Both the position numbers and the translations under genes were made by a program. From the IMG/VR virus record IMGVR_UViG_3300046003_007892, positions 1-64,000 of that record: a DNA stretch of 64,000 nt. One strand, 5' to 3'. Shown here piece by piece: positions 42,411 to 62,196 of this stretch (the stretch's first letter is position 1; each line of letters opens with the position of its first letter). The notes beneath the pieces were generated by a model. It was not told where the DNA came from. It did no database searches and was given only the letters and a program-made list of their open reading frames with translations.

Positions 42411-42452
42411 TAAGCTTGTGACCTTCCCCCTACGGGGCACACACCGATGAAA

Positions 42453-42527: not shown

Positions 42528-42532
42528 GCACG

Positions 42533-42702: not shown

Positions 42703-42777
42703 TGGTGGCCACAGGTGGTCTCGAACCACCGACACCCGCATTTTCAGTGCGGTGCTCTACCCCTGAGCTACATGGCC
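42703..42777 (-). tRNA. tRNA-Phe(GAA)
   Basis: loop CTGAAAA, CCA encoded. Confidence 0.92.
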
Positions 42778-42779
42778 GT

Positions 42780-43070: not shown

Positions 43071-43082
43071 ATATGTATTCAC

Positions 43083-43166
43083 TGGTCGGCAGAGTAGGAT
43101 TCGAACCTACGCGCCTTTCAGAGCGGGGTTACAGTCCGCCGGTTTCAACCACTCACCCATCTGCCG
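43083..43166 (-). tRNA. tRNA-Tyr(GTA)
   Basis: loop CTGTAAC, long variable arm, CCA encoded. Confidence 0.9.
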
Positions 43167-43187
43167 ATAAGTGAATACATACTGCGT

Positions 43188-43262
43188 TGGCAGGAGAGGA
43201 GGGATTTGAACCCCCGACCTTCGGTTTTGGAGACCGCTGCTCTACCACTGAGCTACACTCCT
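43188..43262 (-). tRNA. tRNA-Trp(CCA)
   Basis: loop CTCCAAA, CCA encoded. Confidence 0.92.
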
Positions 43263-46702: not shown

Positions 46703-46878
46703 CTCGATACGTCCTCAAGACCAACAACACCCGCACGGCCATGATCAAACTTGGCGGCATCGAAGGCGTTCGTATCGTCGGAGGGGTTGGCGCCCTGGTC
46801 GTTGAGGTCCATGCTCTGTCCATCCGCAGCGTGAATCGCACGCTCGACGGCTACGGTGAATTGGTCGCCCAACAATGA
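46699..46878 (+). CDS. Small hypothetical protein
   Basis: ATGA coupling on both sides. Confidence 0.55.
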   Translation: MTRYVLKTNNTRTAMIKLGGIEGVRIVGGVGALVVEVHALSIRSVNRTLDGYGELVAQQ

Positions 46879-47342
46879 AGATTGAATACCTTCACGGAGA
46901 CGCCCTAGAGGGACCCGAAACGGTCATCATACAGGGCTGCAACGCGCAAGGTGCCATGGGGTCAGGTTTTGCTAAAGCGATCAGGGACCGTCATCCCGAA
47001 GTCTACGACGGGTATCGGGCAATTTACGAACGTCAGGGTAATCGACTCCGACTCGGACAGGTCATCACCGTGGATGTGGGTTCGCGCATCTTCGCCAACG
47101 CCATCACCCAAGAGTTCTATGGACGCGACCCTGACGTCGTCTACGTCTCGTATGACGCCATGGCAGCAGCGTATGAGGAGATGGACCGCATCGCAATCAG
47201 TGCTCGGGTGGGGGAAGAGCCGCCTCGTTTCGCAATGCCTCTCATTGGGGCTGGGCTTGCAAACGGAGACTGGTCCATCATCGCCGCCATTATTGAAGCC
47301 AAGGCGAAGAACTTTGTCCCTGTCGTCTATCGTTTCCCATAA
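46875..47342 (+). CDS. Macrodomain (ADP-ribose-1''-phosphate processing type)
   Basis: GD.L...IIQGCNAQGAMGSGFAKAI...MPLIGAGLANGDW. Confidence 0.9.
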   Translation: MKIEYLHGDALEGPETVIIQGCNAQGAMGSGFAKAIRDRHPEVYDGYRAIYERQGNRLRLGQVITVDVGSRIFANAITQEFYGRDPDVVYVSYDAMAAAYEEMDRIAISARVGEEPPRFAMPLIGAGLANGDWSIIAAIIEAKAKNFVPVVYRFP

Positions 47343-47670
47343 CGCAAACCCGGCCCTCAAGGGTTATCGAGACCTCACGGGCGACGGGCGCATCCTCCTG
47401 GTCTTCAATGACCATCTGTGCCCGATCACGCCCAAATACCGGGCTGAGATCGTGCTGGAATACAACGCCGCCGACGCCGAGCCATGGTTGCGGATAACGA
47501 AGAACCGGTACGGCAAGGACGACATCTTCGCGTATCTGCGCGACCTCGGCTTTGAGGTATCGAAGAGCATCCTCCATCTTGACGATTTCGGCATCGGTCA
47601 CATCAAATATTCCGAGGCCATGTTGATGGCCCTCGTCATGTATTCACCATCTGAAGAAGAAATAAGTTGA
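47314..47670 (+). CDS. Hypothetical protein
   Basis: 3' part of track ORF 46951-47670; start uncertain. Confidence 0.5.
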   Translation: MSLSSIVSHNANPALKGYRDLTGDGRILLVFNDHLCPITPKYRAEIVLEYNAADAEPWLRITKNRYGKDDIFAYLRDLGFEVSKSILHLDDFGIGHIKYSEAMLMALVMYSPSEEEIS

Positions 47671-47696
47671 CGGAAGCCTTGCCGTCCTGCTAAATA
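47667..47696 (+). promoter_or_regulatory. Hybrid promoter of NAD operon (TTGACG..GCTAAATA)
   Basis: -35 hexamer plus a -10 that is also the late TAAATA box. Confidence 0.55.
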
Positions 47697-47752
47697 GGCT
47701 CATCAGCATCGGGATAGACCCAACGCTGACCAGAGCTTAGTGGGATTCACTT

Positions 47753-48904
47753 ATGGCACCGAACACCAGCGCATCGCCCGCGCACGACCTCGCCGTTTTC
47801 ATTGGCAGGTTCCAGCCGTTTCATAACGGCCACCTTCACGTCATTCTTCAGGCCCTCCTGTTCGCCCGTTACGTGCTGATCGTCATCGGCTCGCACGACA
47901 TGGCGCGTCGGCCTGATCACCTTCCCTTCACCAGCGACGAACGTCGTGACATGATTCTCGCGGGCATCCCCGCCGAGTTCCACGACCGCATCCGCTTCGC
48001 CTACGCGGAAGACTTCGGCAACATGACGATGTGGACCAGCAACGTCCGCCGCATGGCCGAGGTAGTCCTGGCCGAGACCGCCTTCCCCAAAGACGTCAAC
48101 GACTGCTCGGTCACCCTGATCGGGCACAAGAAGGACAACTCGTCCTTCTATCTGTCGGCCTTCCAAGACTGGGAGACCATCGACGTCGCCAACCACGAGA
48201 ACCTGTCCGCGACGCCGATGCGTGAGAAATATCTCAACGCCGACGAGGGCGAAGTCGCCGAGTTCTTCCGAGACGCCGCCATGATGATGCCCAAGGGCAC
48301 CGTGGACTGGCTCAAGGCCTTCATGGTCTCGCGCTACTATCGCGAGATGGTCGCCGAATGGCAGTTCATGAAGGACTACCTGCGCCCCTACCTCGCGCTG
48401 CCGTATCCGCCCAAGTTCGTCACCGTGGACAACGTCGTCATCTTTGGCGACAAGGTTCTGCTGGTCCTCCGCAAGGGCTACCCGTGCAAGGGCCTGTGGG
48501 CTCTGCCGGGCGGCCACCTCAACGACGACGAGAACGTCATCACGGGCTGCCTGCGGGAACTCAAGGAAGAGACCAAGCTGAAGGTCCCCGAGGCCATCCT
48601 GCGCGGCAGCATCATCGGCGAGCCCAAGGTCTACGACAATCCCTACCGGTCGATGCGGAAGCGGACCATCACGCACGCCGTCCTGGTCCACATCGTTCCG
48701 AAGATTCCGACGCGCCAGGATGGCACGCTGGAAACCGACCCGGACAAGATCAGGGCCGCTCTGGCGCCGCCGAAGATCAAGGCGTCGGACGACGCCAAGA
48801 AGGCCCAGTGGGTTCCCCTGCACGAGATCAAGCGCAGTGAACTCATGGAAGACCACTGGCAAATCATCCAAGAGATGCGCCAGCGCATCCCGGCAGACAA
48901 GTAA
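47753..48904 (+). CDS. nadM: Bifunctional NMN/NaMN adenylyltransferase - Nudix ADP-ribose pyrophosphatase
   Basis: IGRFQPFHNGH; WALPGG..DENVITGCLRELKEET Nudix box. Confidence 0.93.
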   Translation: MAPNTSASPAHDLAVFIGRFQPFHNGHLHVILQALLFARYVLIVIGSHDMARRPDHLPFTSDERRDMILAGIPAEFHDRIRFAYAEDFGNMTMWTSNVRRMAEVVLAETAFPKDVNDCSVTLIGHKKDNSSFYLSAFQDWETIDVANHENLSATPMREKYLNADEGEVAEFFRDAAMMMPKGTVDWLKAFMVSRYYREMVAEWQFMKDYLRPYLALPYPPKFVTVDNVVIFGDKVLLVLRKGYPCKGLWALPGGHLNDDENVITGCLRELKEETKLKVPEAILRGSIIGEPKVYDNPYRSMRKRTITHAVLVHIVPKIPTRQDGTLETDPDKIRAALAPPKIKASDDAKKAQWVPLHEIKRSELMEDHWQIIQEMRQRIPADK

Positions 48905-48915
48905 GGGCCCCGACC

Positions 48916-50280
48916 ATGATCAACTTCGATTTCGCCAAGCGGGCCTACGATCACAGCTTCAAGATCGACCCCATCATCCGGTTCCTGTCGGACACGGATT
49001 TCTACAAGCTGTTGATGCACCAGTTCATCTACCGGAACTTCTACAACACGACGGTGTCCTTCCAGGTCTTCAACCGGTCGGACTCCGTGCTGCTCGCGAC
49101 CGAGATCGACGAGGCCGAACTCCGCGCCCAACTCGACCACGTTCGCACCCTGAAATGGGAGCAAAACGAACTCAACTACCTGAAGGCCCAGGAGTTCTAC
49201 GGCAAGCGGGACCTGTTCTGCAACGCCTACCTGGACTACCTCCAACACAGCTTCAAGCTCAGCGACTACGATCTGGAGATGACCGCCAACGGTCAAATTC
49301 TGCTGACCTTCAAGGGCACGTGGGTCGAGGTCACCCTGTGGGAAATCTACGCGCTGGCGATCATCAACGAGATGCGCTACCGCCGCAAGATGGCCCTGAT
49401 GACCAAGATGGGTCTCGACGTCATGTATTCGCAGGCCAAGACCAAGGCCTACCGGAAGGCCAAGAAGCTCGCCCGTCTGGCCAACCTGAAGATCACCGAC
49501 TTCGGCACCCGTCGCCGTCACAGCCATCTCTGGCAGGAATACATCATCCTCCTCTACCGGGACATCCTCGGCGACCGCTTCATCGGCACGTCGAACGTCT
49601 ACTTCGCCATGAAGCACGGCCTGAACGCCATCGGGACCAACGCGCACGAGATGCCGATGGCCTACGCCGCCATGGCCGCCGCCCACGGTGGTTCGGACGA
49701 AGAAATCCGGGAGGCTCAATACAAGTTCCTCCGGGATTGGGCGGCCGATTATCGCGGCGGTCTTCAGGTCTTCCTTCCCGACACCTTCGGCACCACCCAG
49801 TTCCTCAAGGGCGCCCCGCTCTGGCTGAAGGAATGGCGCGGTGGTCGCCCGGATTCCAAGAAACCCATTCCGGGCGGCGAGGAACTGATCGCCTACTGGA
49901 AGGAACACGACGAGGCCATCGAAGAGAAGCTGATCGTTTTCGCTGACGGCCTCGACGTCCGCATCGACGGCTTCGAGCCCAACGGCGAAGACATCACGGC
50001 CATCTATGAACACTTCGAGCCCACGGGCGTCGGCCACACCTACGGTCTGGGCACGATGGGGACCTGTGACTTCCTCGGCTGTCACCCCGACGATACCGAC
50101 GACGTCCAGATCATGAAGCCGATCTCGCTCGTCTGCAAACTCAGCGAAGTTGAAGATGTCCCGGCTGTCAAGCTGTCGGACAACTACAAGAAAGCGACGA
50201 GCGCGAGCCCCGAAGAGGTCGCCCGCTATCGTGCGATCTTTGGTCACGAGGGGATGGAGAACATCCCCGTCCAGGTCTAG
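48916..50280 (+). CDS. pncB: Nicotinate phosphoribosyltransferase
   Basis: DTDFYKLLMHQ, DFGTRRRHS, GTNAHE, PDTFGT, RPDS, AVKLSDN..KATS. Confidence 0.93.
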   Translation: MINFDFAKRAYDHSFKIDPIIRFLSDTDFYKLLMHQFIYRNFYNTTVSFQVFNRSDSVLLATEIDEAELRAQLDHVRTLKWEQNELNYLKAQEFYGKRDLFCNAYLDYLQHSFKLSDYDLEMTANGQILLTFKGTWVEVTLWEIYALAIINEMRYRRKMALMTKMGLDVMYSQAKTKAYRKAKKLARLANLKITDFGTRRRHSHLWQEYIILLYRDILGDRFIGTSNVYFAMKHGLNAIGTNAHEMPMAYAAMAAAHGGSDEEIREAQYKFLRDWAADYRGGLQVFLPDTFGTTQFLKGAPLWLKEWRGGRPDSKKPIPGGEELIAYWKEHDEAIEEKLIVFADGLDVRIDGFEPNGEDITAIYEHFEPTGVGHTYGLGTMGTCDFLGCHPDDTDDVQIMKPISLVCKLSEVEDVPAVKLSDNYKKATSASPEEVARYRAIFGHEGMENIPVQV

Positions 50281-50330
50281 TTGTAAAGAAAAACATTGCC
50301 AGATGTGAAATCTGGAGTAAGGACAATATC

Positions 50331-50948
50331 ATGAGAACCCATCCGAAAAAGTTCGTCGTCTTCGTTGATACCCAAGGCGACTTCGTCTTCCGCAACGGCA
50401 AGCTGCCGGTCGCCGATGCCGAGAGCATCCTGGCCGACCTTCTTCGCTATGCTTCTGAACTCAGCCCCGACGAGGTCGATGGCGTGCTGTTCACCTTCGA
50501 CACCCACGAGCGGGAGACCTACATGGGTTCGCCCGAGAACCTCGGCAATCCCGACGCGGGAGAGCCCGGTTTCGACATCCACTGCGAGCGCGGCACGCCG
50601 GGCTGGGAGAATGTCGTCAACCCCCGGCTGATCGATTCCCGCATCCCCGTCTACACGCTGGAGAAGGGCGTGTTCGACATGTGGGCCGAAGACAATATCG
50701 AAGTTCACGGCGAGCAGATGTATGCGCCCAAGAACCGCGACGCCTTCATCGCCCGCTTCCTCACCGAGGGACAGACCGTCGAGGTTGTCGGCGTCGCCGC
50801 CGACTTCTGTGTGAAGTGGGCCGTGGACGGCTTCGTCAAGCGGGGCTTCCATGTCGTGGTCCCCTCGGAACTCACGCGAGGCATCATTCGCCAAATCGAT
50901 CAGGTGGTCGAGGAAGACTACGCGGAAGGTTCGGTCACCGTCATCTAA
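50331..50948 (+). CDS. pncA: Nicotinamidase (isochorismatase family)
   Basis: VDTQGDF, DTH, HCERGT.GW, KG, VGVAADFCV. Confidence 0.9.
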   Translation: MRTHPKKFVVFVDTQGDFVFRNGKLPVADAESILADLLRYASELSPDEVDGVLFTFDTHERETYMGSPENLGNPDAGEPGFDIHCERGTPGWENVVNPRLIDSRIPVYTLEKGVFDMWAEDNIEVHGEQMYAPKNRDAFIARFLTEGQTVEVVGVAADFCVKWAVDGFVKRGFHVVVPSELTRGIIRQIDQVVEEDYAEGSVTVI

Positions 50949-51038
50949 TACTTGACGAGAATAGAACCTGTGTTAGTTGGTGTTCAACAGGTGGGTTCCA
51001 AGGGGGTGCCCACCGCAACCAGAAGAGATTTTTCTTTC

Positions 51039-51587
51039 ATGTTTGACATCAACGAAGGCGACCGCACCCTTCTCATCATCGACGGTTCGAACCTGTATTC
51101 GGCAGCCAAGTCCCTCGGTCTGGAACTGGACTTCAAGAGGCTCCTGTCCGCCGTCAAGGAAGAGGGCCGCCTTGTTCAGGCCAAATACTATACCGCGATC
51201 TCGGCCGACCCCGAAGAGTTCTCCCCCATCCGGGGTCTGGTCGATTTCCTCGACTACAACGGCTACTCGCTGGTCACCAAGCCCATGAAACGTTTCACGG
51301 ACTCGCAAGGCGTCTTGCGCACCAAGGGCAACATGGACATCGAGATGGCGGTGGACATGGTTCGGATGGCCGACCACGTCGATCACATCATTCTGTTCTC
51401 CGGCGATGGCGACTTCCGCCGCGTTGTTGAGGCCGTCCAGGAGAAAGGCGTCCGCGTCACGGTCGTCTCGACCATGAAGAGCCAGCCGCCCCAGATCGCC
51501 GACGAGCTTCGTCGTCAGGCCGACTGCTTCCTCGATCTCACCACCCTGGCCGCCGTCATTGGCCGGACACCGCCCGCCCCGAAATAA
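51039..51587 (+). CDS. NYN domain LabA/DUF88 protein
   Basis: IDGSNLY, KGNMDIEMAVD, LFSGDGDF, ELRRQAD.F.DL. Confidence 0.9.
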   Translation: MFDINEGDRTLLIIDGSNLYSAAKSLGLELDFKRLLSAVKEEGRLVQAKYYTAISADPEEFSPIRGLVDFLDYNGYSLVTKPMKRFTDSQGVLRTKGNMDIEMAVDMVRMADHVDHIILFSGDGDFRRVVEAVQEKGVRVTVVSTMKSQPPQIADELRRQADCFLDLTTLAAVIGRTPPAPK

Positions 51588-51644
51588 TTTTGTCTCCGTC
51601 ATAGATTTTTGGTAAACGAAAATCTCAACAGCAAAGGTTAACGA

Positions 51645-52346
51645 ATGATTCGTTCCACTCTCTTCGCGGTTCTCGCCGCATCCGCTTCCCTTCTGGCTTC
51701 GGCCGCTTCGGCTCAGGACAACCTGTCCTTCAACGTCGGCGTCACCTCCGACTATGTGACGCGCGGTTCCAGTCAGACCGGCCATGACGCCGCCATTCAG
51801 GGCGGCGCCGACTATGTGTTCGGCGACAGCGGCTTCTACGTCGGCGCATGGGGCTCCACCGTCGATTTCGGCGATGGCACCGATGCCGAACTCGACTACT
51901 ACGGTGGCTACCGCACGGTGGCGGCGGGTTGGGGTCTCGACTTCGGTCTGGCCTCCTACAACTACACCAACGCCCCGGCCGACATCGACATGGTCGAGGC
52001 CCTCGTGACTGCCACCCGCACCTTCGGGACGGTCGGCACCACCTTCCAGGTCGCCTACTCGCCCGACTACTTCAACATCGGCTCCGAAGGCGTCTGGCTC
52101 GAAGCCGGGGCCACCGTGCCGGTCGCCGACCGTCTGACCCTGTCGGGCTCCGTGGGCGCCCAGATCGTCGAAGAGCAGGGCTTCGGCAATGCCTCCTATG
52201 AGACCTGGAATGTCGGGCTGGGCTACAAGCTGACCGACAATCTGTCCGCCGATCTCCGCTACACGGGCAACAACCTCCGCGACACCGATTTCGGCGCCGA
52301 TTTCGCCGACGACACGGTCGCGTTCACCATCAACGCGGCCTTCTAA
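51645..52346 (+). CDS. TIGR02001/TorF-family outer-membrane beta-barrel
   Basis: Signal peptide; TSDYVTRGSSQT...AIQGGADY...YVGAWGSTVDF...ELDYYGG; C-terminal Phe. Confidence 0.85.
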   Translation: MIRSTLFAVLAASASLLASAASAQDNLSFNVGVTSDYVTRGSSQTGHDAAIQGGADYVFGDSGFYVGAWGSTVDFGDGTDAELDYYGGYRTVAAGWGLDFGLASYNYTNAPADIDMVEALVTATRTFGTVGTTFQVAYSPDYFNIGSEGVWLEAGATVPVADRLTLSGSVGAQIVEEQGFGNASYETWNVGLGYKLTDNLSADLRYTGNNLRDTDFGADFADDTVAFTINAAF

Positions 52347-52358
52347 GGAAAAGCGCAG

Positions 52359-53021
52359 ATGACCGATTTCTTCCAAGCAATCTCGACGGCGGCGGCAGCA
52401 ATGACCCCGCTGGAAATCTTCGCGACGGTGACGTCGGCCCTCTGCGTGTTTCTCGCAGGGAAGCGGAAGGTGATCAACTACCCCATCGGTATCGTGGGGA
52501 CGATTGCCTTTTTCTTCTTCTTCTGGAACGTCGGCCTCTACAGTTCCGCCATCCTCCAGGTGTTCTTCACCGCCGTTCAGTTCTACGGCTGGTGGTACTG
52601 GCTCAAGGGCAACAAGGGCACTCCTCCCCCGATCACGCGGGCAAACCGCAACTGGTTGATCGGGGGCGGGGTGGCCGCCATCGTCGGAGCCTACGCGCTG
52701 TCGCTGATCACCGGGGCCTTCAACGCCAACATGGCGTTCGCTGACGCGGTCATCTTCGGCCTCAGCGTGGTCGCCCAGTTCTTCATGGACCGCAAGAAGC
52801 TGGAAAGCTGGCTGGTCTGGGGCGTCGTCAACGTCCTGTCCATCTATGTGTACGGCAGCCAGGGTCTGGTCCTGACGACCGTCCTCTACGTCGCCTTCCT
52901 CGTCCATGCCGGTTACGGCTGGTGGCAGTGGTATCGGGAGTGGGAGGTACGCACCCGTAGCGAAGCCGAGACCAAGCGGGTCTGGCAGAACGCCGACGCC
53001 AGCAAGGGAACTGTGGTCTGA
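52359..53021 (+). CDS. pnuC: Nicotinamide riboside transporter
   Basis: NYPIGI, QFYGWWYW, SVVAQFFM.RKKLESWLVW..VN. Confidence 0.92.
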   Translation: MTDFFQAISTAAAAMTPLEIFATVTSALCVFLAGKRKVINYPIGIVGTIAFFFFFWNVGLYSSAILQVFFTAVQFYGWWYWLKGNKGTPPPITRANRNWLIGGGVAAIVGAYALSLITGAFNANMAFADAVIFGLSVVAQFFMDRKKLESWLVWGVVNVLSIYVYGSQGLVLTTVLYVAFLVHAGYGWWQWYREWEVRTRSEAETKRVWQNADASKGTVV

Positions 53022-53022
53022 T

Positions 53023-53259
53023 ATGAGTGCAGTCGAGATTGCTCGGAACCACAAGACCCTCCAGGTCGTGGACAACCTTGGCAACGAGTTTACCCTCTAC
53101 TGCAACGGCGGGGAAGTCATGGTAAGTCTCGTGGAGGTTCCGAAGGCCAAGGGGGAGGAGGCGGAGATCGGCCGCACCTTCCTCGATCTCGACACCCTTG
53201 AAGTCGTCCTCATGGAAGCCTTGGATTTCGTCCGGTCCAAGAATCCAAAGCTTCCATGA
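53023..53259 (+). CDS. Small hypothetical protein
   Basis: ATG 1 nt after pnuC stop. Confidence 0.55.
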   Translation: MSAVEIARNHKTLQVVDNLGNEFTLYCNGGEVMVSLVEVPKAKGEEAEIGRTFLDLDTLEVVLMEALDFVRSKNPKLP

Positions 53260-53314
53260 TTTGCTTGACAAGTATTCCGGCCGGGTTCATATAGAGCCAA
53301 CACGGAGGGCCACC

Positions 53315-53596
53315 ATGACTGACCGCAACGAACTCGGAATCTTCGACGCATCTTCTGCGCCGGAGGACAACTCGGTCTTCTATGCGCTCGTCGATGACGG
53401 CAAAGTCTGGGGGCCGCTGACCTACTGGTCGGAAGGAACCTGGAACGCGCGCGCCTTCCCCGACCACCCGACCATGTTCGCCGACGATGAGGGCCACGGT
53501 ATCGACGCCGGGTCGTTCGTCGGCTGGGCTCCCACGCTGGTGGAAGTCGAACAGGCAAAAATCCTCTACGACCGTGCCACCGGAGAAGTCCAATGA
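53315..53596 (+). CDS. Small hypothetical protein
   Basis: GGAGGG SD; TTGACA promoter at 53265. Confidence 0.6.
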   Translation: MTDRNELGIFDASSAPEDNSVFYALVDDGKVWGPLTYWSEGTWNARAFPDHPTMFADDEGHGIDAGSFVGWAPTLVEVEQAKILYDRATGEVQ

Positions 53597-53802
53597 CCCC
53601 GTTCGTGTCCCAGTATGGCGAGCCCCATCCCCGCGCCTCGACGTGGCACTGGCAGGAGATCGAAGGCGGACAGGCGACCGGCAACGGCGGGACCGTTCGG
53701 GGCTCGACCGAGATGGAAGCCCTCGACCGCTTGCGCGAAGAATATCCCGGCATCGGTGCCATCAAGTGGGTGAAGCGGGTCGCTGCTCCCCCGGAGAACT
53801 AG
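53593..53802 (+). CDS. Small hypothetical protein
   Basis: ATGA coupling. Confidence 0.55.
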   Translation: MTPFVSQYGEPHPRASTWHWQEIEGGQATGNGGTVRGSTEMEALDRLREEYPGIGAIKWVKRVAAPPEN

Positions 53803-54852
53803 ATGTTCGTTAAGCCCAAGATCGGTTTCCTGCTCGGCAAGTTCTTGCCGCCCCACAACGGGCACAAGTTCCTGTGCGAGTTCGCCCGCCAGTATTGTGA
53901 CCATCTCGTCATCCTCGTCGCCACCCTTCCGAGCGAGCCCATTCCTGGCCGCCTCCGCTACGAGTGGATGAAGGAGATGTTCCCCGACTGCACGGTCGTG
54001 TGGACCAACGAAGTCCTCCCGCAGGAACCGAAGAACGACCGCGATGGTCAGTTTTGGGAAACGTGGAAGCAGGAAATCGCCAAGGCCATGCGGGCGCACG
54101 CCCGCACGTTCAACGACGGCATGGGCATCGGCGGCTTGCCGTGGAAATGGCCCGACGTCGTGTTCGCCTCCGAAGACTACGGCCACAAGCTCGCGGCATC
54201 GGTCGGTGCCCGGTTCGTCCCCTGCGACATCGTCCGTCAGGCTGTCCCGATCTCGGGCACGCGTGTGCGGGCCAACCCGGAACTGGAATGGGAGTTCCTC
54301 CCGGACGTCGTCCGCCCCTACTTCGTCAAGCGCGCGGTGGTGTTCGGGCCGGAGAGCACGGGCAAGTCAACCCTGGCCGCAGAACTCGCCGCGCACTTCA
54401 AGACTACCCTGGTTCCCGAATACGGCCGGACCTACACCGAGGCGTTCGGCTCCGACGTTGGACCCGAAGACCTCAAGAACATCGTAGCCGGACACGTCGC
54501 CAGTGTGGCGGCTGCCAAGCGGCAGTGCAAAACCCGCGTCCTGATTGAAGACACCGACCCCGTCATGACCGCCGTGTGGTCCGACATGCTGGTCGGCGAA
54601 CGGGACCCGTGGTTCTCCGAGTATCGCGACCACGCCGACATCTATCTGTTGTGTGACGTCGATATCCCGTGGGTCAATGACGGCACTCGCTATTTCGAGA
54701 ACGATGAAGATCGCCGAAGATTTTTCGCCATCTGTGAAAAAGAACTTCAAGATCGTCGCGTTCCCTATGTTGTCATTCGGGGCGATAGAAAAGAACGACT
54801 GCGTCTTGCCATCGACGCCGTGCAGGGGTTATATGGTGCACCGATAATCTGA
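53803..54852 (+). CDS. nadR: NadR-type NMN adenylyltransferase / ribosylnicotinamide kinase (no HTH)
   Basis: GKFLPPHNGH; GPESTGKSTLA; VPEYGR; DTD; DIPWVNDG.R. Confidence 0.92.
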   Translation: MFVKPKIGFLLGKFLPPHNGHKFLCEFARQYCDHLVILVATLPSEPIPGRLRYEWMKEMFPDCTVVWTNEVLPQEPKNDRDGQFWETWKQEIAKAMRAHARTFNDGMGIGGLPWKWPDVVFASEDYGHKLAASVGARFVPCDIVRQAVPISGTRVRANPELEWEFLPDVVRPYFVKRAVVFGPESTGKSTLAAELAAHFKTTLVPEYGRTYTEAFGSDVGPEDLKNIVAGHVASVAAAKRQCKTRVLIEDTDPVMTAVWSDMLVGERDPWFSEYRDHADIYLLCDVDIPWVNDGTRYFENDEDRRRFFAICEKELQDRRVPYVVIRGDRKERLRLAIDAVQGLYGAPII

Positions 54853-54862: not shown

Positions 54863-55177
54863 ATGTCGATCTCTGCGCCTCCTATCCGGTTCTGGAAACC
54901 AATCTCGACGGCCCCCCGTCTACCGCGTTCGCCCGGCCACGGCTTCGGGCCCCTGATTGGACTGTTCGTCCCCTACAACCCAGCCCGTTTCTCCCAGGAG
55001 AAATGCTGGGACGTCGGGTACTGGTGCGAACACCACAAATGCTTCCGCTTCACTGGTGACGATGGCCCCAATGACATGCAGCCCACGCACTGGTGCGAAA
55101 TCGATTTTCCTGCAATTGCCCCAGAGGACTATGCCGGGCAGGGTGTATTGGCCACCGGGGGCCAAGATGGGTTGTGA
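54863..55177 (+). CDS. DUF551-like small protein
   Basis: WKPISTAP...PTHW. Confidence 0.6.
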   Translation: MSISAPPIRFWKPISTAPRLPRSPGHGFGPLIGLFVPYNPARFSQEKCWDVGYWCEHHKCFRFTGDDGPNDMQPTHWCEIDFPAIAPEDYAGQGVLATGGQDGL

Positions 55178-55715
55178 TATCCACGCCTTCATCGAGAGGC
55201 AGATGCCTGACGGGTCATGGACGACCCAGTTCAAGATCGACGGCATCACGTTCGATGATTACATCGAGCGCAAGATCGCAGACGGGACCGCCCAGACCGT
55301 GACCGGGACGTCAGACGATGATGAGGCCCGCGCCCGCTTCCGCGCCATGCTAGAGGCGATGGACCCAGATGAGGCGGTGGCCAAACTGGGTGATCAAATC
55401 AAGCCAAACTTCGTGATGCCTGAACCTTTTGAATGGCGCCACTATGCGTTCTTCTACGCCATTGCGGGCGTGCGGGGTCGCGGGGGTCCGCAGTTCTGGG
55501 AGCCCCGAGGCGTGCCCCCCGACGTGTCCGTCGAGACCGCCGACTATATCGAAAGCTGGAACGCAGATGGTCACACCCATAGCTGGCAGATGCTGTCCGA
55601 ACTCCTGGCCGAGCCCGGCATGAAAGAGTTCGAAGCCTATTATGCCGCCTTCGAGGAGATCGCCTCCAAGGTGGACCCGACCTGCACCCGCCTCGTTTAT
55701 TTCTTCGACAACTAA
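55167..55715 (+). CDS. Conserved phage protein (MGCDIH...FFDN)
   Basis: MGCDIH start, AGVR, HTHSW, LVYFFDN end. Confidence 0.75.
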   Translation: MGCDIHAFIERQMPDGSWTTQFKIDGITFDDYIERKIADGTAQTVTGTSDDDEARARFRAMLEAMDPDEAVAKLGDQIKPNFVMPEPFEWRHYAFFYAIAGVRGRGGPQFWEPRGVPPDVSVETADYIESWNADGHTHSWQMLSELLAEPGMKEFEAYYAAFEEIASKVDPTCTRLVYFFDN

Positions 55716-55724
55716 GAGGGCCCC

Positions 55725-56285
55725 ATGGGCTGCGACATCCATATTGCTTTCGAGATCAAGCGCGAGAAGGGGTGGGAACCCCTGCTGCCCGTCATCATTG
55801 AAGACATGTGGGATTTCATCGACGAAAAAATCGCCGATGGAACCGCCCATACCCTGACCGGCACATCGGACGATGACGAGGCCCTTGAGCGATTCAAGGC
55901 CTATCTGAAATCCATGCCTCCCGAAGAAAAGCTGGAGAAGTTCGCCTACCACGAAAAAGTCCGCCTCAGTTTCGGATGTGGGTACGACCTTCGTGGACGC
56001 GACTACGAGTTCTTCACCAGTATCGCGGGGGTGCGGTCCTATAACGAAGACCACAAAATCATTTGGCAGCCTCGTGGCGTCCCGGATGACGTCTCGCCTC
56101 TTGTGAAAAAAGAAATCGATTACTACGACTGTGATGGACACTCGCACAGTTGGCAGATGCTGTCCGAACTCCTCAATGAGCCCAGGATAGCTGCGCGACA
56201 TCCTCACAAAATGAAACCCTTGCTGGAAATCGCCAAGATGGGAGACCCGGAGAAAATCCGCATGGTCTACTATTTCGACAACTAA
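55725..56285 (+). CDS. Tandem paralog of previous gene
   Basis: MGCDIH...AGVR...HSHSW...MVYYFDN. Confidence 0.75.
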   Translation: MGCDIHIAFEIKREKGWEPLLPVIIEDMWDFIDEKIADGTAHTLTGTSDDDEALERFKAYLKSMPPEEKLEKFAYHEKVRLSFGCGYDLRGRDYEFFTSIAGVRSYNEDHKIIWQPRGVPDDVSPLVKKEIDYYDCDGHSHSWQMLSELLNEPRIAARHPHKMKPLLEIAKMGDPEKIRMVYYFDN

Positions 56286-56354
56286 ACGGGGGCGGGAAAT
56301 TAATTGCTTGACAACACACTTCTCTGTGTTCTAATGCCCAAGAAGGAGAAGTAA

Positions 56355-56894
56355 ATGTTTGTCAAGGCCAATGAACTAGCCGCCGTCCTCAACGAGTCCG
56401 AAACCGGCAAGATGAGCGTGGGGGTCTACACCGACACCATGTCCGCCGCCGCGCTGGGCAAGCTGCTCGACGCCGAGGTCGTGGATACGGATTCGTTCCA
56501 GCCCCGCGACGGAAGGCTGGTCATCGACTGCACCGATGCCGTCACCGACGACATGGACCGCAAGCGGGAAATCTATGCCGCCATCGACCGAGCCGCGCTC
56601 TACAGCGGGGTCTGCACGGCGGTGTTCGCCTTCAGGCAAAGCTACGATCTCGGTGCCGCCTCGAACCGCATCATCAACTTCACGATGCGGCGCAGGGGAC
56701 GGCCGAGCCGGGTTGACCCCGAGAAAGTCATCAACGCCCTTCGGGGGACCACTCCTGGCCCGCTCGTGCTCGCCAACATCGAACGTGGCGCCATGACCGT
56801 GGTGGGCAAGGAGTTCGGCCTGACCCGCGCCCGCGTCTCCCAGATCGTTCAGGACTACGTCGCGTCCCAGCCGAAGCCCCGGAAGGCCAAGTGA
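56355..56894 (+). CDS. Protein with C-terminal sigma-r4-like HTH
   Basis: MTVVGKEFGLTRARVSQIV. Confidence 0.65.
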   Translation: MFVKANELAAVLNESETGKMSVGVYTDTMSAAALGKLLDAEVVDTDSFQPRDGRLVIDCTDAVTDDMDRKREIYAAIDRAALYSGVCTAVFAFRQSYDLGAASNRIINFTMRRRGRPSRVDPEKVINALRGTTPGPLVLANIERGAMTVVGKEFGLTRARVSQIVQDYVASQPKPRKAK

Positions 56895-57058
56895 TGCGGC
56901 GCCTGAATCCCACCCATATACGAAACGAAACGCTCCGAAGGGCCGGGACCATCAACACCGTCATGACTGGCGTCTACCTTAGCGGCGCCGGTCATGGCTT
57001 CGTTTGCGGCGTGATCGCCACCCTGGCGGTCGTCGGCATCGTTGCGCTCATTTTCTGA
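56894..57058 (+). CDS. Small membrane protein (54 aa)
   Basis: TGATG coupling at both ends; hydrophobic C-terminus. Confidence 0.5.
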   Translation: MRRLNPTHIRNETLRRAGTINTVMTGVYLSGAGHGFVCGVIATLAVVGIVALIF

Positions 57059-57702
57059 TGGGCGGCGCAGTAAAGGTCGCCTTTCGGCTCCACGACGGCA
57101 CGGTCACGGCTGACACCCGGTGGACGAACGCGGTCCCCCACAAGCTCACGGACCCAATGTTAGTGGCCGACGACGCAGAATACTTGCGCGAATACGCGTA
57201 TGCGGAATCCGACTATCGGAGCAACGGTGAGGACGTTACGGTCTCACCGACCGGATACGGTCTGATCGTCGTCGATGCCATCACGCACACCATTTACAGC
57301 GGCAACGGCTACTGCACGCCGGGTGAGCACAACGCCTCGACGATCATGAGAAATACCCGGCAGGACCCAGAAGCGTTCAAGCTCTGGGACCAGATGATGC
57401 GCGAAGGCCGCCTGTCGGTCTATCGTTTCTTGAGCGGCGGCGTGCGCGAACCCTATCCGGGCTTCGCGGCCGATTCGCCCCTCACCGTCACAGAAGAGGC
57501 CCGTTCCATCTACCATTTCGAGGAGCGGGCGAACGAGTACACCACGGTCGTCATCAGCCTCGCGCCATGGACGGTGCGGCGGTTTAGCATGACGCCCGAT
57601 CTCGAAATGCTCAATGCCCTCGTCGAGGGGGGCTTCCCCCTGACAGACCTGGACCGGCTGGCGTGGAATCACTGGTTCCGCGACCAAGAAAACGAAAACT
57701 AA
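57058..57702 (+). CDS. Hypothetical protein
   Basis: TGATG start MGGAVKVAFR. Confidence 0.65.
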   Translation: MGGAVKVAFRLHDGTVTADTRWTNAVPHKLTDPMLVADDAEYLREYAYAESDYRSNGEDVTVSPTGYGLIVVDAITHTIYSGNGYCTPGEHNASTIMRNTRQDPEAFKLWDQMMREGRLSVYRFLSGGVREPYPGFAADSPLTVTEEARSIYHFEERANEYTTVVISLAPWTVRRFSMTPDLEMLNALVEGGFPLTDLDRLAWNHWFRDQENEN

Positions 57703-57713
57703 AGGGACCACCC

Positions 57714-58868: not shown

Positions 58869-58904
58869 TTTGACAGCAGCCCAGACTGGAAGCCACAATA
58901 GCGA

Positions 58905-59315
58905 ATGGTCTACGTGATCTTCTTCGCCCTTGTGGTCGCCGGTCTGGGCTCGCTCATCTGCGCAGTCATGGCCGCTTACTATCTTGTGAAGATCGCAGCG
59001 ATGTCGGGCGAAGAGGTCCAGGTCGCCTATGATAACGGTGCCCGCTGGCCGCATCAGTGGATTCGCTACGTGGGCACTCCCCTCTATCAGGAGGGGCGGA
59101 AGAAAAAGATTTCGCGAATGATGGCCCGCAAGCGCATCGCCCGCATCGGCATCGACCGCTACGGGAAGAAGATCATCCTCATGGAGACCTTGAAGGCGAT
59201 GGAGGGGCGGCTGGAAGCCTCAGGGAAGCCCGCTGAGCCCATTCGCGTGGATTTGCCTCCCGTGGGCCCACCCGAGCACTATTACGGCGTCTGGCGGCTC
59301 GACAAGGGCCTCTAG
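58905..59315 (+). CDS. Membrane-anchored protein
   Basis: N-terminal hydrophobic helix; TTGACA promoter near 58870. Confidence 0.65.
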   Translation: MVYVIFFALVVAGLGSLICAVMAAYYLVKIAAMSGEEVQVAYDNGARWPHQWIRYVGTPLYQEGRKKKISRMMARKRIARIGIDRYGKKIILMETLKAMEGRLEASGKPAEPIRVDLPPVGPPEHYYGVWRLDKGL

Positions 59316-60323: not shown

Positions 60324-61022
60324 TCAAGCAATTTGAGCCCTGGGTTTATTTTTTGAACCCTTCTTGGGACCGGTAGTGCTGAACGGCGTGGTGGTGATTT
60401 TCTCCATCGACCAACCTTTCTTAAGCCGAACAGAGAATGCGGCCGGGCTGCATCCTAGCTCGCGCGCCCACGCGGCTTGCGTCAGGTTCTTCCCGTCATA
60501 TTCGATGCTTTTCGATGGACCGAGGGGCCGCCCCTGCTTGCTCTTGGGTTTGTTCAAGGCTTCCTCAATCGACCAGCCGCGCAGGAGACGATTCGGTATG
60601 GTGCCGCGATTGAAGCCCTTGGTCTTGCCCCACTGGGTCCTGTTCAGGGTCTCGTCATCGACCGTGATCATGTTCGCGCTCTTGCGAAGTCTCTGAACGC
60701 GTTCTGGGCTCTCACCGAGTGGCGTGGTGATTGCCTCCTCGGTCGTCCATCCGCGCCCCAACCGGGAACGAATAACCTCGCCGCCGATGCCGTAGCGGTC
60801 GCCCCAGTTGGGCGTTGACATCGTCTCGCCGTTGAATGTCAGAAGGCTTGTGGCGTGCCAGGGGTCATGGATGAGGGAGTCGGGACGGAACAGGCGATCT
60901 CCCCGCATGCCGCGCCGCCAACGGATATACAGGGTGTGGCGGTGGATGCCGGTTTCGCGAGCCCACTCGGAGAGGCCTTGCGTTTTGCCCTCGTGGGCAA
61001 CGAGGATTTTCAATGCGGGCAC
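60324..61022 (-). CDS. Protein of four tandem HNH-associated DNA-binding repeats, no nuclease domain
   Basis: Repeats of (Y/F/H)xGxTxxLxxWAxxxG...RLxxGWSxExA. Confidence 0.7.
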   Translation of the reverse strand: MPALKILVAHEGKTQGLSEWARETGIHRHTLYIRWRRGMRGDRLFRPDSLIHDPWHATSLLTFNGETMSTPNWGDRYGIGGEVIRSRLGRGWTTEEAITTPLGESPERVQRLRKSANMITVDDETLNRTQWGKTKGFNRGTIPNRLLRGWSIEEALNKPKSKQGRPLGPSKSIEYDGKNLTQAAWARELGCSPAAFSVRLKKGWSMEKITTTPFSTTGPKKGSKNKPRAQIA

Positions 61023-61097: not shown

Positions 61098-62126
61098 TTA
61101 TCGAGCCGAAGGCGGCACGAACAGACGGAGGTCGAGATCGTCGATAGCCTGAAGGCGCGGCATCATGGGGTGGTCGAAGTTGAGCGGGTTCTTGCGCTTG
61201 AACCAGCTTCCGCCGATGCGGCCGGTGACGTTATTGAAGATCGTCAAATCCTTCGAGTTGCCGAGCTTCAGGGCGGCGCGCAGACGAGCATCGTCCATCG
61301 GGCCGGTCGTGCTTTCGAGGACATCCTGAATGGCCAGGACCATCAGGTCCCATTCCAGATAGGTGGCGCCGAGTTGGGCTTCATCGCCACCCGCAAGAAC
61401 GGCCAGACCATCGGTCGGCGTCGCGCGCCACGTCGCTTCCGGCACGCCGAGACGACGAGCCAGCGCGGGGACTTCCCACGATTTCAGCAGCGACTGGATG
61501 GGGGCCACGTCGCCGACGTCGCCGTGCACGGTCCAGAACCCGGCAACGAGTTCCGACCAGTTGTCGGTCGAGGCCACGAAACCACGGAGCTTGCGGGCCC
61601 AGTTGTAGAGGGTGATCATCCGCAGACGGGCCCGGACGTTGCCGCGACGAACGCGGACTTCCTGGTCGGGGTCTTCCTCGTGGGCGAGATCGAAATCGCC
61701 GAGGCTCTTCAGCGTCGCGTCATAGAGTTCGGTGAGATCGACGTTCATGTGTTCGAGGCCGAGGGCCCGGCAGGTTTCGATGCCGCGTTCGGTTTCCTCG
61801 GGGTTCTGGTGGATGGGCAGCGTGAAGCCGATCACCCGGTATCCGGCACGTTTGAACAGCGCAGCGACAACGGCCGAATCGACGCCGCCCGACATGCCGA
61901 GCACGACGGTTTCGGTGCCGGTTTGGATGCGGTAGCCGGTCAGACGATGGACCAGCGAGTCCATGATGAAGGTGAGGCTGTGCTCTGGGAGGTAGCGACC
62001 CTTGACGATCTGCGCGTCCAGTTGGGCGGCGAACCAGGGGCTGAGGGTGTGGAGGTTATTTTGGCGGCTGAGATCGAGGATGTCAGCGCGGAGGGCGGCG
62101 TCAGCCACCGGTATTCTGAAGGTCAT
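61098..62126 (-). CDS. nadE: NH3-dependent NAD+ synthetase
   Basis: VLGMSGGVDSAVV, GNVRARLRM, STDNWSELVAGFWTVHGD; start 62126 or 62141. Confidence 0.9.
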   Translation of the reverse strand: MTFRIPVADAALRADILDLSRQNNLHTLSPWFAAQLDAQIVKGRYLPEHSLTFIMDSLVHRLTGYRIQTGTETVVLGMSGGVDSAVVAALFKRAGYRVIGFTLPIHQNPEETERGIETCRALGLEHMNVDLTELYDATLKSLGDFDLAHEEDPDQEVRVRRGNVRARLRMITLYNWARKLRGFVASTDNWSELVAGFWTVHGDVGDVAPIQSLLKSWEVPALARRLGVPEATWRATPTDGLAVLAGGDEAQLGATYLEWDLMVLAIQDVLESTTGPMDDARLRAALKLGNSKDLTIFNNVTGRIGGSWFKRKNPLNFDHPMMPRLQAIDDLDLRLFVPPSAR

Positions 62127-62196
62127 AACAAATCCTGCCATGTATGGCGGCGGTCGGGTCTATCCCAGTTGCCGTGCAAGCACTCTACGCCCGCCG

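What the first reader, a model, noticed from the sequence alone, without database searches (positions are those of the whole stretch)
47667..54852. Complete Preiss-Handler plus NR-import NAD rebuilding kit
Seen: NadM-Nudix, PncB, PncA, then NYN, an OM barrel, PnuC and NadR, with NadE at 61098-62126. Known chemistry: NADase-type defences (Thoeris ThsA, DSR, SIR2-pAgo) yield nicotinamide and ADP-ribose. PncA, PncB, NadM and NadE rebuild NAD from nicotinamide, Nudix turns ADP-ribose into AMP and R5P, and PnuC/NadR import and convert NR. Described phage routes NARP1 (Adps+Namat) and NARP2 (Nampt+Nmnat) use other enzymes. Inference: a distinct deamidating NAD-reconstitution route with a parallel import route. 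It would need host or out-of-window PRPP synthetase.
Basis: partly seen in the sequence, partly recalled or inferred. Interest (0 to 1): 0.72.

Follow-up and report, generated by a model that had tools for sequence, protein, structure and literature searches.

The report
Jumbo phage NAD-rebuilding gene cluster
A lake-water jumbo phage carries, in one 8-kb block, enzymes to rebuild NAD from nicotinamide, plus an importer set for nicotinamide riboside with its own outer-membrane channel; most parts are already described in phages, and only the channel and the fusion of the two routes look new.

Summary
Window 46.9-54.9 kb (+ strand) encodes a macro domain, NadM-Nudix, PncB, a nicotinamidase-type PncA, NYN, a 12-stranded Gcw_chp/TorF porin, PnuC, three small ORFs and NadR. 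NadE lies at 61098-62141 on the minus strand. Catalytic motifs are intact, and independent lake metagenomes bridge every gene junction.

The host genome is an Atu_ph07/Phosso-like jumbo myovirus (240-kb fragment, about 45% complete).
- PnuC+NadR is NARP3, published in August 2026.
- Preiss-Handler clusters in "NAD-jumbo phages" were described in 2024.
- Atu_ph07 and Phosso already carry PncB, the same PncA, NadE and PnuC.
- At least 20 IMG/VR contigs share a NadE-PncB-PncA module.

Three things are not described in the papers I read:
- The porin-PnuC-NadR trio recurs in five phage lineages. The closest bacterial pnuC-nadR operons lack the porin, and the closest bacterial porins sit beside amt.
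- Both routes are fused in one cluster.
- A macro domain lies next to the cluster.

No Prs gene was found here or in complete relatives. The phage also encodes ADP-ribosyltransferases, so supplying its own NAD use rivals the counter-defence reading. The order of amidation and adenylylation is unresolved. Verdict: a new variant of a known kind, moderate interest.

The parts
46875..47342 (+). Macro-domain protein (155 aa). Likely an ADP-ribose-binding or ADP-ribose-releasing enzyme.
   Evidence: Pfam Macro is only E 0.003. PHROG 335 gives E 2e-38. The ESM Atlas model has pTM 0.91 and TM 0.93 to a viral Macro-domain cluster. Motifs NAQGAMGSGFA and GAGLA are present. Homologues lie near NadM-PncB in L072 and L085.
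47314..47670 (+). Small ORF of unknown function. The start is uncertain; TTG at 47314 is the first in-frame start.
   Evidence: GC3 frame plot and translation. No family hit.
47753..48904 (+). NadM-Nudix: a bifunctional nicotinamide/nicotinate mononucleotide adenylyltransferase fused to an ADP-ribose pyrophosphatase.
   Evidence: Pfam and NCBIfam hits. PDB 2qjo E 2e-62 and 2qjt E 4e-58. GRFQPFHNGH at residue 18, SATPMR at 152, Nudix box at 254.
48916..50280 (+). PncB, nicotinate phosphoribosyltransferase.
   Evidence: PF17767 plus PF04095; NF003704 378.5 bits. PDB 1ybe E 9e-118. FGTRRR and GTNAHE motifs. It is the only PF04095 hit in the 240-kb record.
50331..50948 (+). PncA-type nicotinamidase, a divergent branch of the isochorismatase superfamily.
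   Evidence: The top seven PDB hits are named nicotinamidase or pyrazinamidase. D13/K112/C160 and D57/H59/H84 are invariant in the window, Phosso and Atu_ph07 proteins. Identity is 53% to the Phosso 'hydrolase' and 43% to Atu_ph07 AUZ95018.
50952..51587 (+). LabA-like NYN-domain protein, probable start near 51039. Likely a passenger gene with no evident NAD role.
   Evidence: PF01936 E 5e-36. Atlas places it in a bacterial LabA-like NYN cluster, with the model starting at residue 30. It is not found beside the NAD genes in any related phage locus.
51645..52346 (+). Outer-membrane 12-stranded beta-barrel channel (Gcw_chp/TorF family), with a signal peptide and a C-terminal Phe.
   Evidence: PF09694 105 bits, TIGR02001 167 bits. 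The AF2 model has pLDDT 91.2 and 12 strands. Foldseek top hits are FapF, NanC, KdgM, OmpG and PcoB. The gene order porin-PnuC-NadR recurs in L003, L009, L047 and L048.
52359..53021 (+). PnuC nicotinamide riboside transporter (inner membrane).
   Evidence: PF04973 164 bits, TIGR01528 108 bits. Identity is 45-70% to PnuC in the other trio-bearing phages.
53023..53802 (+). Three small ORFs of unknown function inserted between PnuC and NadR: about 53023-53259, 53198/53315-53596 and 53593-53802.
   Evidence: GC3 frame plot, translations and ORF list. No Pfam or NCBIfam hits. Other phages carry different insertions at this position, including an IS1595 transposase in L047.
53803..54852 (+). NadR-type bifunctional NMN adenylyltransferase / ribosylnicotinamide kinase, lacking the HTH regulator domain.
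   Evidence: TIGR01526 233 bits; NF005988 aligns from profile position 63 onward. PDB 8x7f E 3e-30, 1lw7 E 7e-26, 9x6f (Bas30_86) E 5e-24. Motifs GKFLPPHNGH, ISGTRVR and GPESTGKS are present.
60324..61022 (-). HNH homing-endonuclease-like gene directly downstream of NadE. It may explain why NadE is displaced.
   Evidence: PHROG 3377 E 3e-33.
61098..62141 (-). NadE: single-domain, NH3-dependent NAD synthetase family. NaAD versus NaMN specificity is unresolved.
   Evidence: PF02540 138 bits, TIGR00552 139 bits. SGGVDS at residue 84. The best PDB hit is 3fiu (84.5 bits), then 2e18 (78 bits). Identity is 49-58% to NadE genes that sit next to PncB in IMG/VR jumbo contigs.

Best explanation
This is a phage-encoded NAD+ supply block made of three cooperating parts.

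1. A deamidating salvage branch. PncA turns nicotinamide into nicotinate. PncB, using host PRPP and ATP, makes NaMN. NadM and NadE then finish to NAD+.
2. An import branch, NARP3-like. A phage-made 12-stranded outer-membrane channel lets nicotinamide riboside into the periplasm. PnuC carries it across the inner membrane. NadR phosphorylates and adenylylates it to NAD+.
3. ADP-ribose handling. The macro domain frees or binds ADP-ribose. The Nudix half of NadM splits it to AMP and ribose-5-phosphate, which host Prs can turn back into PRPP.

The block keeps NAD+ available during the long infection of a jumbo phage of a Caulobacterales-type host. It would work whether NAD+ is drained by host NADase defences or by the phage's own ADP-ribosyltransferases.

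Shown by sequence: gene identities, intact catalytic motifs, tight co-directional packing, and conservation of each module in other phages.
Inferred: substrate specificities, NR passage through the porin, and the counter-defence role.
For: - Domain and motif evidence exists for every enzyme.
- From NadM to PnuC the genes are co-directional with 3-57 bp gaps.
- A NadE-PncB-PncA module, or NadM-PncB-PncA with Macro nearby, is conserved in at least 20 IMG/VR jumbo-phage contigs and in Phosso and Atu_ph07.
- The order porin-PnuC-NadR is conserved in the window, three other large phage-like contigs (L009 569 kb, L047 279 kb, L048 272 kb) and all 11 Bertelyvirus records, despite different insertions between the genes.
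- The closest bacterial pnuC-nadR operons (20 loci, Hyphomonadaceae/Caulobacterales) have no such porin within 6 kb. In the three examined they sit between glnD and mutS.
- The porin model is a confident 12-stranded channel like NanC and KdgM.
- PnuC+NadR from phage Bas30 restores NAD+ against Sir2-HerA (PMC13464706). Nampt plus a NadM-type Nmnat from KVP40 defeats Thoeris and DSR2.
- The region is identical across independent lake metagenomes.
Against: - There is no functional data for any protein here.
- NadM-family enzymes often prefer NMN, so the NaMN -> NaAD step is unproven (PMC3376133).
- NadE is on the other strand, 6 kb away.
- Nothing links the porin to NR except gene order. Its nearest bacterial relatives sit next to ammonium transporters.
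- No Prs was found, so PncB depends on the host.
- The phage has at least two ART-PolyVal ADP-ribosyltransferases, so the block may serve phage NAD consumption rather than counter-defence.
- 0 of 11 other PncB-bearing IMG/VR jumbo phages have PnuC or the porin, so the two branches are not obligately linked.
Confidence: 0.72

Rival explanations
1. Same enzymes, different purpose. The block is an auxiliary metabolic module that feeds the phage's own NAD+ demand, mainly its ADP-ribosyltransferases, and recycles their by-product nicotinamide. It is not primarily a countermeasure to host NADase immunity.
For: At least two ART-PolyVal domains lie in the same genome: window 19291-19653 and G000 85413-86096. 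A macro domain, which reverses ADP-ribosylation, sits at the head of the block. The 'NAD-jumbo phage' paper reports synthesis genes together with NAD-consuming genes. KVP40 NARP2 raises NAD+ even without a defence system.
Against: Homologous two-gene sets (NARP2, NARP3) do defeat Thoeris, DSR2 and Sir2-HerA in experiments. The two purposes are not exclusive. No NAD-dependent DNA ligase was found in the 240-kb fragment.
Confidence: 0.4
2. The deamidating branch runs in the Francisella order. NadE acts as an NMN synthetase (NaMN -> NMN), and NadM and/or NadR then adenylylate NMN. Both branches would converge on NMN, and no NaMN adenylyltransferase would be needed.
For: There is no NadD; the only NMNAT-like genes are NadM and NadR. 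The best solved-structure match of NadE is 3fiu, which to my knowledge is the Francisella enzyme characterised as an NMN synthetase (84.5 bits). NadM replacing NadD goes with NMN-synthetase activity in Francisella (PMC3376133).
Against: The margin over conventional NAD synthetases is small (84.5 against 78 and 75 bits). Archaeal and Acinetobacter NadM accept NaMN and work with ordinary NAD synthetases. Specificity residues could not be checked against a held source, because the 2009 PNAS paper was not available.
Confidence: 0.35
3. The porin is unrelated to NR uptake. It could be an ammonium or cation channel that supplies NH3-dependent NadE, or an envelope-remodelling or superinfection-exclusion protein that merely happens to lie next to PnuC.
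For: The closest bacterial homologues (Brevundimonas and relatives, 41-53% identity) lie immediately downstream of an Amt ammonium transporter in three of three Caulobacterales chromosomes examined. NadE here is of the ammonia-dependent type. From my own knowledge, prophage-encoded porins used for exclusion are known.
Against: Bertelyviruses keep porin-PnuC-NadR but have no NadE above threshold, no PncB and no PncA. The order porin-PnuC-NadR survives different insertions in five lineages. 34 other IMG/VR Gcw_chp loci with more distant porins have no PnuC or NadR, so the pairing is specific to this porin clade.
Confidence: 0.25
4. The block is a recently captured piece of host DNA, or an assembly artefact, with no selected function in the phage.
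For: GC3 of NadM and PncB is at the 96th-98th percentile of the genome's ORFs. PncB is closest to an alphaproteobacterial enzyme.
Against: The sequence is identical in a second IMG/VR contig and in four lake metagenomes, with every junction bridged. The same modules occur in many complete jumbo-phage genomes with direct terminal repeats. Catalytic residues are invariant across phage homologues. The flanks are phage genes: baseplate wedge, tRNA arrays and HNH.
Confidence: 0.03

Closest known systems
NARP3 (Bas30_87 PnuC + Bas30_86 NadR; Sci Adv 2026, PMC13464706)
   Same: It pairs a PnuC-type NR transporter with an HTH-less NadR (NMNAT + RNK) on a phage genome, on the same strand. The window NadR matches the Bas30_86 structure 9x6f at E 5e-24, with the HxGH, ISxTxxR and Walker A motifs kept.
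   Different: The host range differs: Caulobacterales-type jumbo phages here, Enterobacteriaceae phages there. Three small ORFs lie between the two genes. A dedicated outer-membrane porin gene precedes PnuC, and the NARP3 paper never mentions an outer membrane or a porin. Here the pair is fused to a Preiss-Handler module.
NARP2 / KVP40 NadV + NatV (Nampt + Nmnat)
   Same: It has a NadM-type Nmnat that finishes NAD+ from a mononucleotide made from nicotinamide and PRPP, and it depends on host PRPP. From my own knowledge, KVP40 NatV is a NadM-Nudix fusion like the window protein.
   Different: There is no Nampt here. The one-step amidated route is replaced by PncA + PncB + NadE, which is deamidating and needs extra ATP and ammonia.
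'NAD-jumbo phage' Preiss-Handler clusters (pncB-nadD-nadE, e.g. Kuafu_71; Microbiome 2024, PMC11662467)
   Same: A jumbo phage carries a clustered, complete Preiss-Handler gene set. PnuC, NadR and NadM clusters are also reported there.
   Different: Here NadM replaces NadD. A nicotinamidase makes nicotinamide, not nicotinate, the entry point; that paper mentions phage pncA only in passing. It reports no porin and no macro domain. Those phages come from animal guts and this one from lake water.
Agrobacterium phage Atu_ph07 and Sinorhizobium phage Phosso (cultured relatives)
   Same: The structural genes match (baseplate wedge 40-43% identity). They share PncB (45-47%), the same divergent PncA (43-53%), NadE, Nudix and PnuC; Atu_ph07 also has NadR. 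Neither has Prs.
   Different: In those phages PnuC(/NadR) lies far from PncB. They have no Gcw_chp porin. In Phosso, NMNAT and Nudix are separate genes. Their PncA is annotated only as 'hydrolase' or 'hypothetical'.
Caulobacter Bertelyvirus phages (CcrBL9 gp342-344)
   Same: They have the same three-gene order of Gcw_chp porin, PnuC and NadR (36%, 53% and 60% identity).
   Different: They have no PncB, PncA or NadE. They are siphoviruses unrelated to the window phage. Their porin is annotated only as 'putative exported protein' or 'hypothetical'.
Haemophilus influenzae NR uptake (OmpP2 porin - PnuC - NadR) and Francisella NadE*/NadM route (established knowledge; PMC3376133)
   Same: The cellular logic is the same: a porin, then PnuC, then NadR for NR scavenging. 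An NadM-with-NadE pathway without NadD also exists in cells.
   Different: Those are cellular and not clustered. OmpP2 is a 16-stranded general-type porin, which I state from my own knowledge and did not test here.

Membership tests
NARP3 | PnuC-like nicotinamide riboside transporter encoded by the phage | tested here: met
   PF04973 164 bits and TIGR01528 108 bits, both above their cutoffs.
NARP3 | NadR-like bifunctional RNK + NMNAT enzyme without the HTH domain | tested here: met
   TIGR01526 233 bits. NF005988 aligns from profile position 63. HxGH, ISGTRVR and Walker A motifs are present. The match to Bas30_86 (9x6f) is E 5e-24.
NARP3 | The two genes form an adjacent two-gene operon | tested here: inconclusive
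   They share a strand but are 780 bp apart, with three small ORFs between them. The order is conserved in related phages, with other insertions. Co-transcription was not tested.
NARP3 | Restores NAD+ and phage growth against NAD-depleting defence, dependent on NR | not testable with these tools
   This needs infection assays.
NARP2 | Nampt (nicotinamide phosphoribosyltransferase) | tested here: not met
   The only PF04095 protein in the 240-kb record is PncB-type: NAPRTase_N domain and 1ybe E 9e-118. The record is about 45% complete.
NARP2 | Nmnat of the NadM(-Nudix) type | tested here: met
NARP1 | Adps (Prs-like ADPR pyrophosphokinase) plus Namat | tested here: not met
   There is no Pribosyltran_N hit in the record, and no Nampt/Namat-type protein.
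Preiss-Handler salvage pathway with nicotinamide entry | Nicotinamidase with a Asp-Lys-Cys triad and a metal site | tested here: met
   D13, K112, C160 and D57, H59, H84 align with Mtb PncA residues and are invariant in the three phage homologues. Activity was not assayed.
Preiss-Handler salvage pathway with nicotinamide entry | Nicotinate phosphoribosyltransferase | tested here: met
Preiss-Handler salvage pathway with nicotinamide entry | NaMN adenylyltransferase activity | tested here: inconclusive
   There is no NadD; only NadM and NadR are present. NadM enzymes vary in how well they accept NaMN.
Preiss-Handler salvage pathway with nicotinamide entry | NAD synthetase (PP-loop amidotransferase) | tested here: met
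   PF02540 and TIGR00552 are above their cutoffs and SGGVDS is present. Whether the substrate is NaAD or NaMN is not testable here.
Gcw_chp / TorF putative porin family (12-stranded small OM channels) | Family HMM above cutoff, signal peptide, C-terminal aromatic residue, closed beta-barrel | tested here: met
   PF09694 105 bits (cutoff 24) and TIGR02001 167 bits (cutoff 47). The N-terminal hydrophobic leader ends in AxA, and the protein ends in Phe. The AF2 model has 12 strands at pLDDT 91, and Foldseek finds NanC, KdgM and FapF.
NAD-jumbo phage (PMC11662467) | Phage genome over 200 kb encoding every gene of a salvage or Preiss-Handler route | tested here: met
   The record is 240 kb and about 45% complete. 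The gene set is as above.

The most novel reading that the evidence does not exclude
Lytic jumbo phages of Caulobacterales build an envelope-spanning vitamin-scavenging line of their own. A phage-encoded 12-stranded outer-membrane channel, recruited from a host porin clade that normally partners the Amt ammonium transporter, feeds nicotinamide riboside to phage PnuC and NadR. In this phage that three-tier NARP3 variant is fused to a nicotinamidase-initiated deamidating route and a macro domain. Together they form a single super-module able to rebuild NAD+ from both NADase products and from the environment. The deamidating route (PncA-PncB-NadM/NadE) would then be a fourth NAD+ reconstitution pathway, conserved in Atu_ph07-like phages.
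Probability: 0.35. Interest if true: 0.65.

Novelty: new variant of a known kind. Interest (0 to 1): 0.45.

Why it matters
NAD+ depletion is a major bacterial anti-phage strategy, and three phage NAD+ reconstitution pathways are now established.

This locus shows that a whole clade of roughly 0.5-Mb alphaproteobacterial phages carries a different, deamidating solution: a nicotinamidase, PncB and NadE. One member has joined it physically to a NARP3-type import route.

The recurrent phage-encoded outer-membrane channel in front of PnuC suggests that outer-membrane permeability to NR limits NARP3 in some diderm hosts, and that phages solve this themselves. That would be a rare case of a lytic phage installing a nutrient channel in the host envelope.

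Cultured phages carry each module (Atu_ph07, Phosso, CcrBL9), so both ideas can be tested directly.

Tried and rejected
- A single-sequence AlphaFold model of the macro-like protein was useless (pLDDT 37). The ESM Atlas and PHROGs settled its identity instead.
I rebuilt the alignment without that row.
- The single-protein PncB scan of IMG/VR found only the phage itself. An alignment query was needed.
- I looked for PRPP synthetase, Nampt, NadD and NAD-dependent ligase in the 240-kb record. None were found, but the record is only about 45% complete.
- I looked for a riboswitch or other Rfam element in the block and found none.
- The promoter/terminator scan was uninformative, at near-shuffle counts.
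- I tried to decide whether NadE is an NAD or an NMN synthetase from PDB scores. The margin is too small, and the paper that defines the specificity residues is not held.
- I asked whether bacteria pair this porin with pnuC. They do not. The bacterial pnuC-nadR operons lack it, and the bacterial porins pair with amt.
- tblastx of the trio-bearing contigs against the genome gave only noise outside the trio.
- The whole-record search of L009, L047 and L048 for PncB was not possible, because those records are not held.
- NYN was considered as a pathway member and rejected. It is not conserved with the module anywhere else.

Full report
**What is there.** The window is the first 64 kb of a 240-kb IMG/VR virus record that CheckV rates about 45% complete. 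GC content is 58-59%. Its 1112-aa baseplate wedge protein is 43% identical to that of Sinorhizobium phage Phosso and 40% to that of Agrobacterium phage Atu_ph07, both about 0.47-0.49 Mb. The window also holds 16 tRNA genes. It is therefore a fragment of an Atu_ph07-like jumbo myovirus.

Between 46.9 and 54.9 kb a co-directional block on the + strand encodes:
- a macro domain, 46875-47342
- a small unknown ORF
- NadM-Nudix, 47753-48904
- PncB, 48916-50280
- a PncA-type nicotinamidase, 50331-50948
- a LabA-like NYN protein, 50952-51587
- a Gcw_chp/TorF outer-membrane barrel, 51645-52346
- PnuC, 52359-53021
- three small unknown ORFs
- an HTH-less NadR, 53803-54852

These calls rest. NadE is at 61098-62141 on the minus strand, followed by an HNH endonuclease. 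From NadM to PnuC the intergenic gaps are 3-57 bp.

**Are the enzymes plausible?**
- NadM has GRFQPFHNGH, SATPMR and an intact Nudix box. It matches the Synechocystis and Francisella NadM-Nudix structures at E 1e-58 to 1e-62.
- PncB matches the Agrobacterium NAPRTase structure at E 9e-118 and keeps FGTRRR and GTNAHE.
- PncA is the weakest call by HMM, at 29 bits. Its top seven solved relatives are named nicotinamidase or pyrazinamidase. The Asp-Lys-Cys triad (D13, K112, C160) and the metal ligands that mark nicotinamidases within the isochorismatase superfamily (D57, H59, H84) are invariant in it and in its Phosso and Atu_ph07 homologues.
- NadR keeps the HxGH, ISxTxxR and Walker A motifs. It matches E. 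coli-type, Haemophilus and Bas30_86 NadR structures.
- NadE has the SGGVDS PP-loop.
- The macro protein is below Pfam threshold. It matches PHROG 335 at E 2e-38, and its Atlas model superposes on viral Macro clusters at TM 0.93.

**Is it real DNA of one phage?** A second IMG/VR contig carries the whole block at 100% identity. Contigs of four lake-water metagenomes cover 47700-53600 with 0-1 differences. Separate contigs bridge each junction from PncB to the small ORFs after PnuC.

**What is already known.**
- PnuC+NadR in phages was proposed as a reconstitution pathway in the NARP1/2 paper. It was demonstrated as NARP3 in 2026 with Bas30_86/87, including rescue from Sir2-HerA.
- Jumbo phages with complete salvage or Preiss-Handler gene sets ('NAD-jumbo phages', e.g. 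pncB-nadD-nadE clusters) were reported in 2024. Jumbo-phage NAD systems were reviewed in 2021.
- The Atu_ph07 paper lists PncB, NadR, PnuC and Nudix genes.

**How widespread the parts are.**
- In INPHARED, PncB relatives occur in 13 of 50,697 records. This PncA occurs in 3: Phosso, and Atu_ph07 as two records.
- In IMG/VR an alignment query found 35 PncB loci. In about 20 of them NadE lies about 1 kb upstream of PncB and/or this PncA lies 1.4-5 kb downstream (4.5 kb upstream in one). Three (L071, L072, L085) share the window's NadM-PncB arrangement, and L072 and L085 also have a Macro homologue nearby. Several of these are complete 435-578 kb genomes with terminal repeats.
- The nicotinamidase-initiated deamidating module is therefore a clade trait, not a one-off.
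- None of 11 such records has PnuC or a Gcw_chp porin. Atu_ph07 and Phosso have PnuC elsewhere in the genome. The physical fusion of the two branches was seen only in this phage.

**The porin.** This is the least expected part.
- Its AlphaFold model, built from a 42-sequence alignment, is confident (pLDDT 91.2). It shows a signal helix plus 12 strands. Foldseek finds the 12-stranded channels FapF, NanC, KdgM and PcoB, and also OmpG.
- The gene order porin-PnuC-NadR recurs in CcrBL9 and all ten other Bertelyvirus records. It also recurs in three other large phage-like contigs of 569, 279 and 272 kb, with porin identities of 48-62%. Different small ORFs, and once an IS1595 transposase, are inserted between the genes.
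- The 20 closest bacterial pnuC loci (Hyphomonadaceae, Caulobacterales and other alphaproteobacteria, with some more distant) have nadR directly downstream in most cases. None has a porin of this family within 6 kb. In the three examined, the operon sits between glnD and mutS.
- Conversely, the closest bacterial porins (Brevundimonas and relatives, 41-53% identity) lie directly downstream of an Amt ammonium transporter in three of three Caulobacterales chromosomes examined.
- 34 more distant Gcw_chp loci in IMG/VR have no PnuC or NadR.
- The simplest reading is that phages of Caulobacterales recruited a small cation-channel porin and attached it to the NR importer.
- Bertelyviruses lack NadE, PncB and PncA. 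That argues against the porin serving ammonia supply to NadE.
- NR passage remains an inference from gene order alone.

**Mechanism and open steps.**
- Nicotinamide, whether from host NADases or from the phage's own ADP-ribosyltransferases, would be deamidated by PncA and ribosylated by PncB using host PRPP. No Prs was found here or in three complete relatives.
- From NaMN there are two possible orders: NadM then NadE (classical), or NadE as an NMN synthetase followed by NadM/NadR (Francisella-type). There is no NadD. NadE's best structural match is 3fiu, which I recall as the Francisella NMN synthetase, but only by about 6 bits. NadM enzymes differ in NaMN acceptance. I leave this open at roughly 65:35 for the classical order.
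- The Nudix half should split ADP-ribose, by homology to the slr0787 and Francisella enzymes. The macro domain could release ADP-ribose from modified targets.
- NYN is a bacterial-type LabA-like protein. It is not found with these genes in any other phage, and I treat it as a passenger.

**Purpose.** Counter-defence is supported only by analogy to NARP2 and NARP3. Self-supply for phage ADP-ribosyltransferases is equally compatible. The two are not exclusive.

**Verdict.** The block is a new variant of a known kind: a fuller, fused version of already described phage NAD modules. Two features were not found described in the papers I read:
1. the phage-specific outer-membrane channel coupled to PnuC-NadR
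2. the clade-wide nicotinamidase-initiated route as a candidate fourth reconstitution pathway

Interest is moderate, at 0.45.

Noticed in passing
window 26644-27291 and 40741-43262 (- strand): Two tRNA arrays with 16 tRNA genes in all, including duplicated Arg, Gln, Asp, Ile and Val.
   Followed up: no
window 40906-41155 (-): An Rfam group I intron hit scores 50.1 bits against a gathering cutoff of 50. It lies next to an unusually long (89-nt) tRNA-Asn call at 40741-40829. It could be a real intron in or beside a tRNA or protein gene, or a borderline hit.
   Followed up: no
window 19291-19653 (+), ORF 18922-19698; also G000 85413-86096 (-) and 86774-86959 (+): ART-PolyVal ADP-ribosyltransferase domains lie in the phage genome: two above cutoff and one weak. 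The phage is itself an NAD+ consumer.
   Followed up: partly
window 60324-61022 (-): An HNH homing-endonuclease-like gene lies directly downstream of NadE. In related phages NadE sits next to PncB, so a mobile element may have accompanied its relocation.
   Followed up: no
L047 12605-13522: In a related 279-kb phage-like contig, an IS1595-family transposase and several small ORFs are inserted between PnuC and NadR. The trio order is still preserved.
   Followed up: no
L011 4462-6678; L104 2560-4696; L105 2496-4678: In Brevundimonas-type chromosomes the closest bacterial homologue of the phage porin lies immediately downstream of an Amt ammonium transporter. In L105 it is followed by glutamate synthase genes. 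This suggests an uncharacterised outer-membrane partner for ammonium uptake.
   Followed up: partly
window 47753-50280: NadM and PncB have GC3 of 0.86-0.87, at the 96th-98th percentile of the genome's ORFs. This fits recent capture from a high-GC host or strong codon adaptation.
   Followed up: partly
L003 8592-8984; L002 13311-13763; L048 768-1250: Nucleoside 2-deoxyribosyltransferase-like genes (DUF1937/DUF4406, Nuc_deoxyri_tr2) sit next to or near the NAD genes in CcrBL9, Phosso and a 272-kb contig. No counterpart was detected in the window block.
   Followed up: no
window 47700-53600: The same sequence, with 0-1 differences, recurs in lake-water metagenomes from at least five samples and studies dated 2023-2025. 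This points to a widespread, nearly clonal freshwater phage.
   Followed up: partly
window 54863-60292: About eight ORFs between NadR and the HNH gene have no Pfam hits. Only 55725-56285 matches a PHROG of unknown function (phrog_10141, E 6e-30).
   Followed up: no
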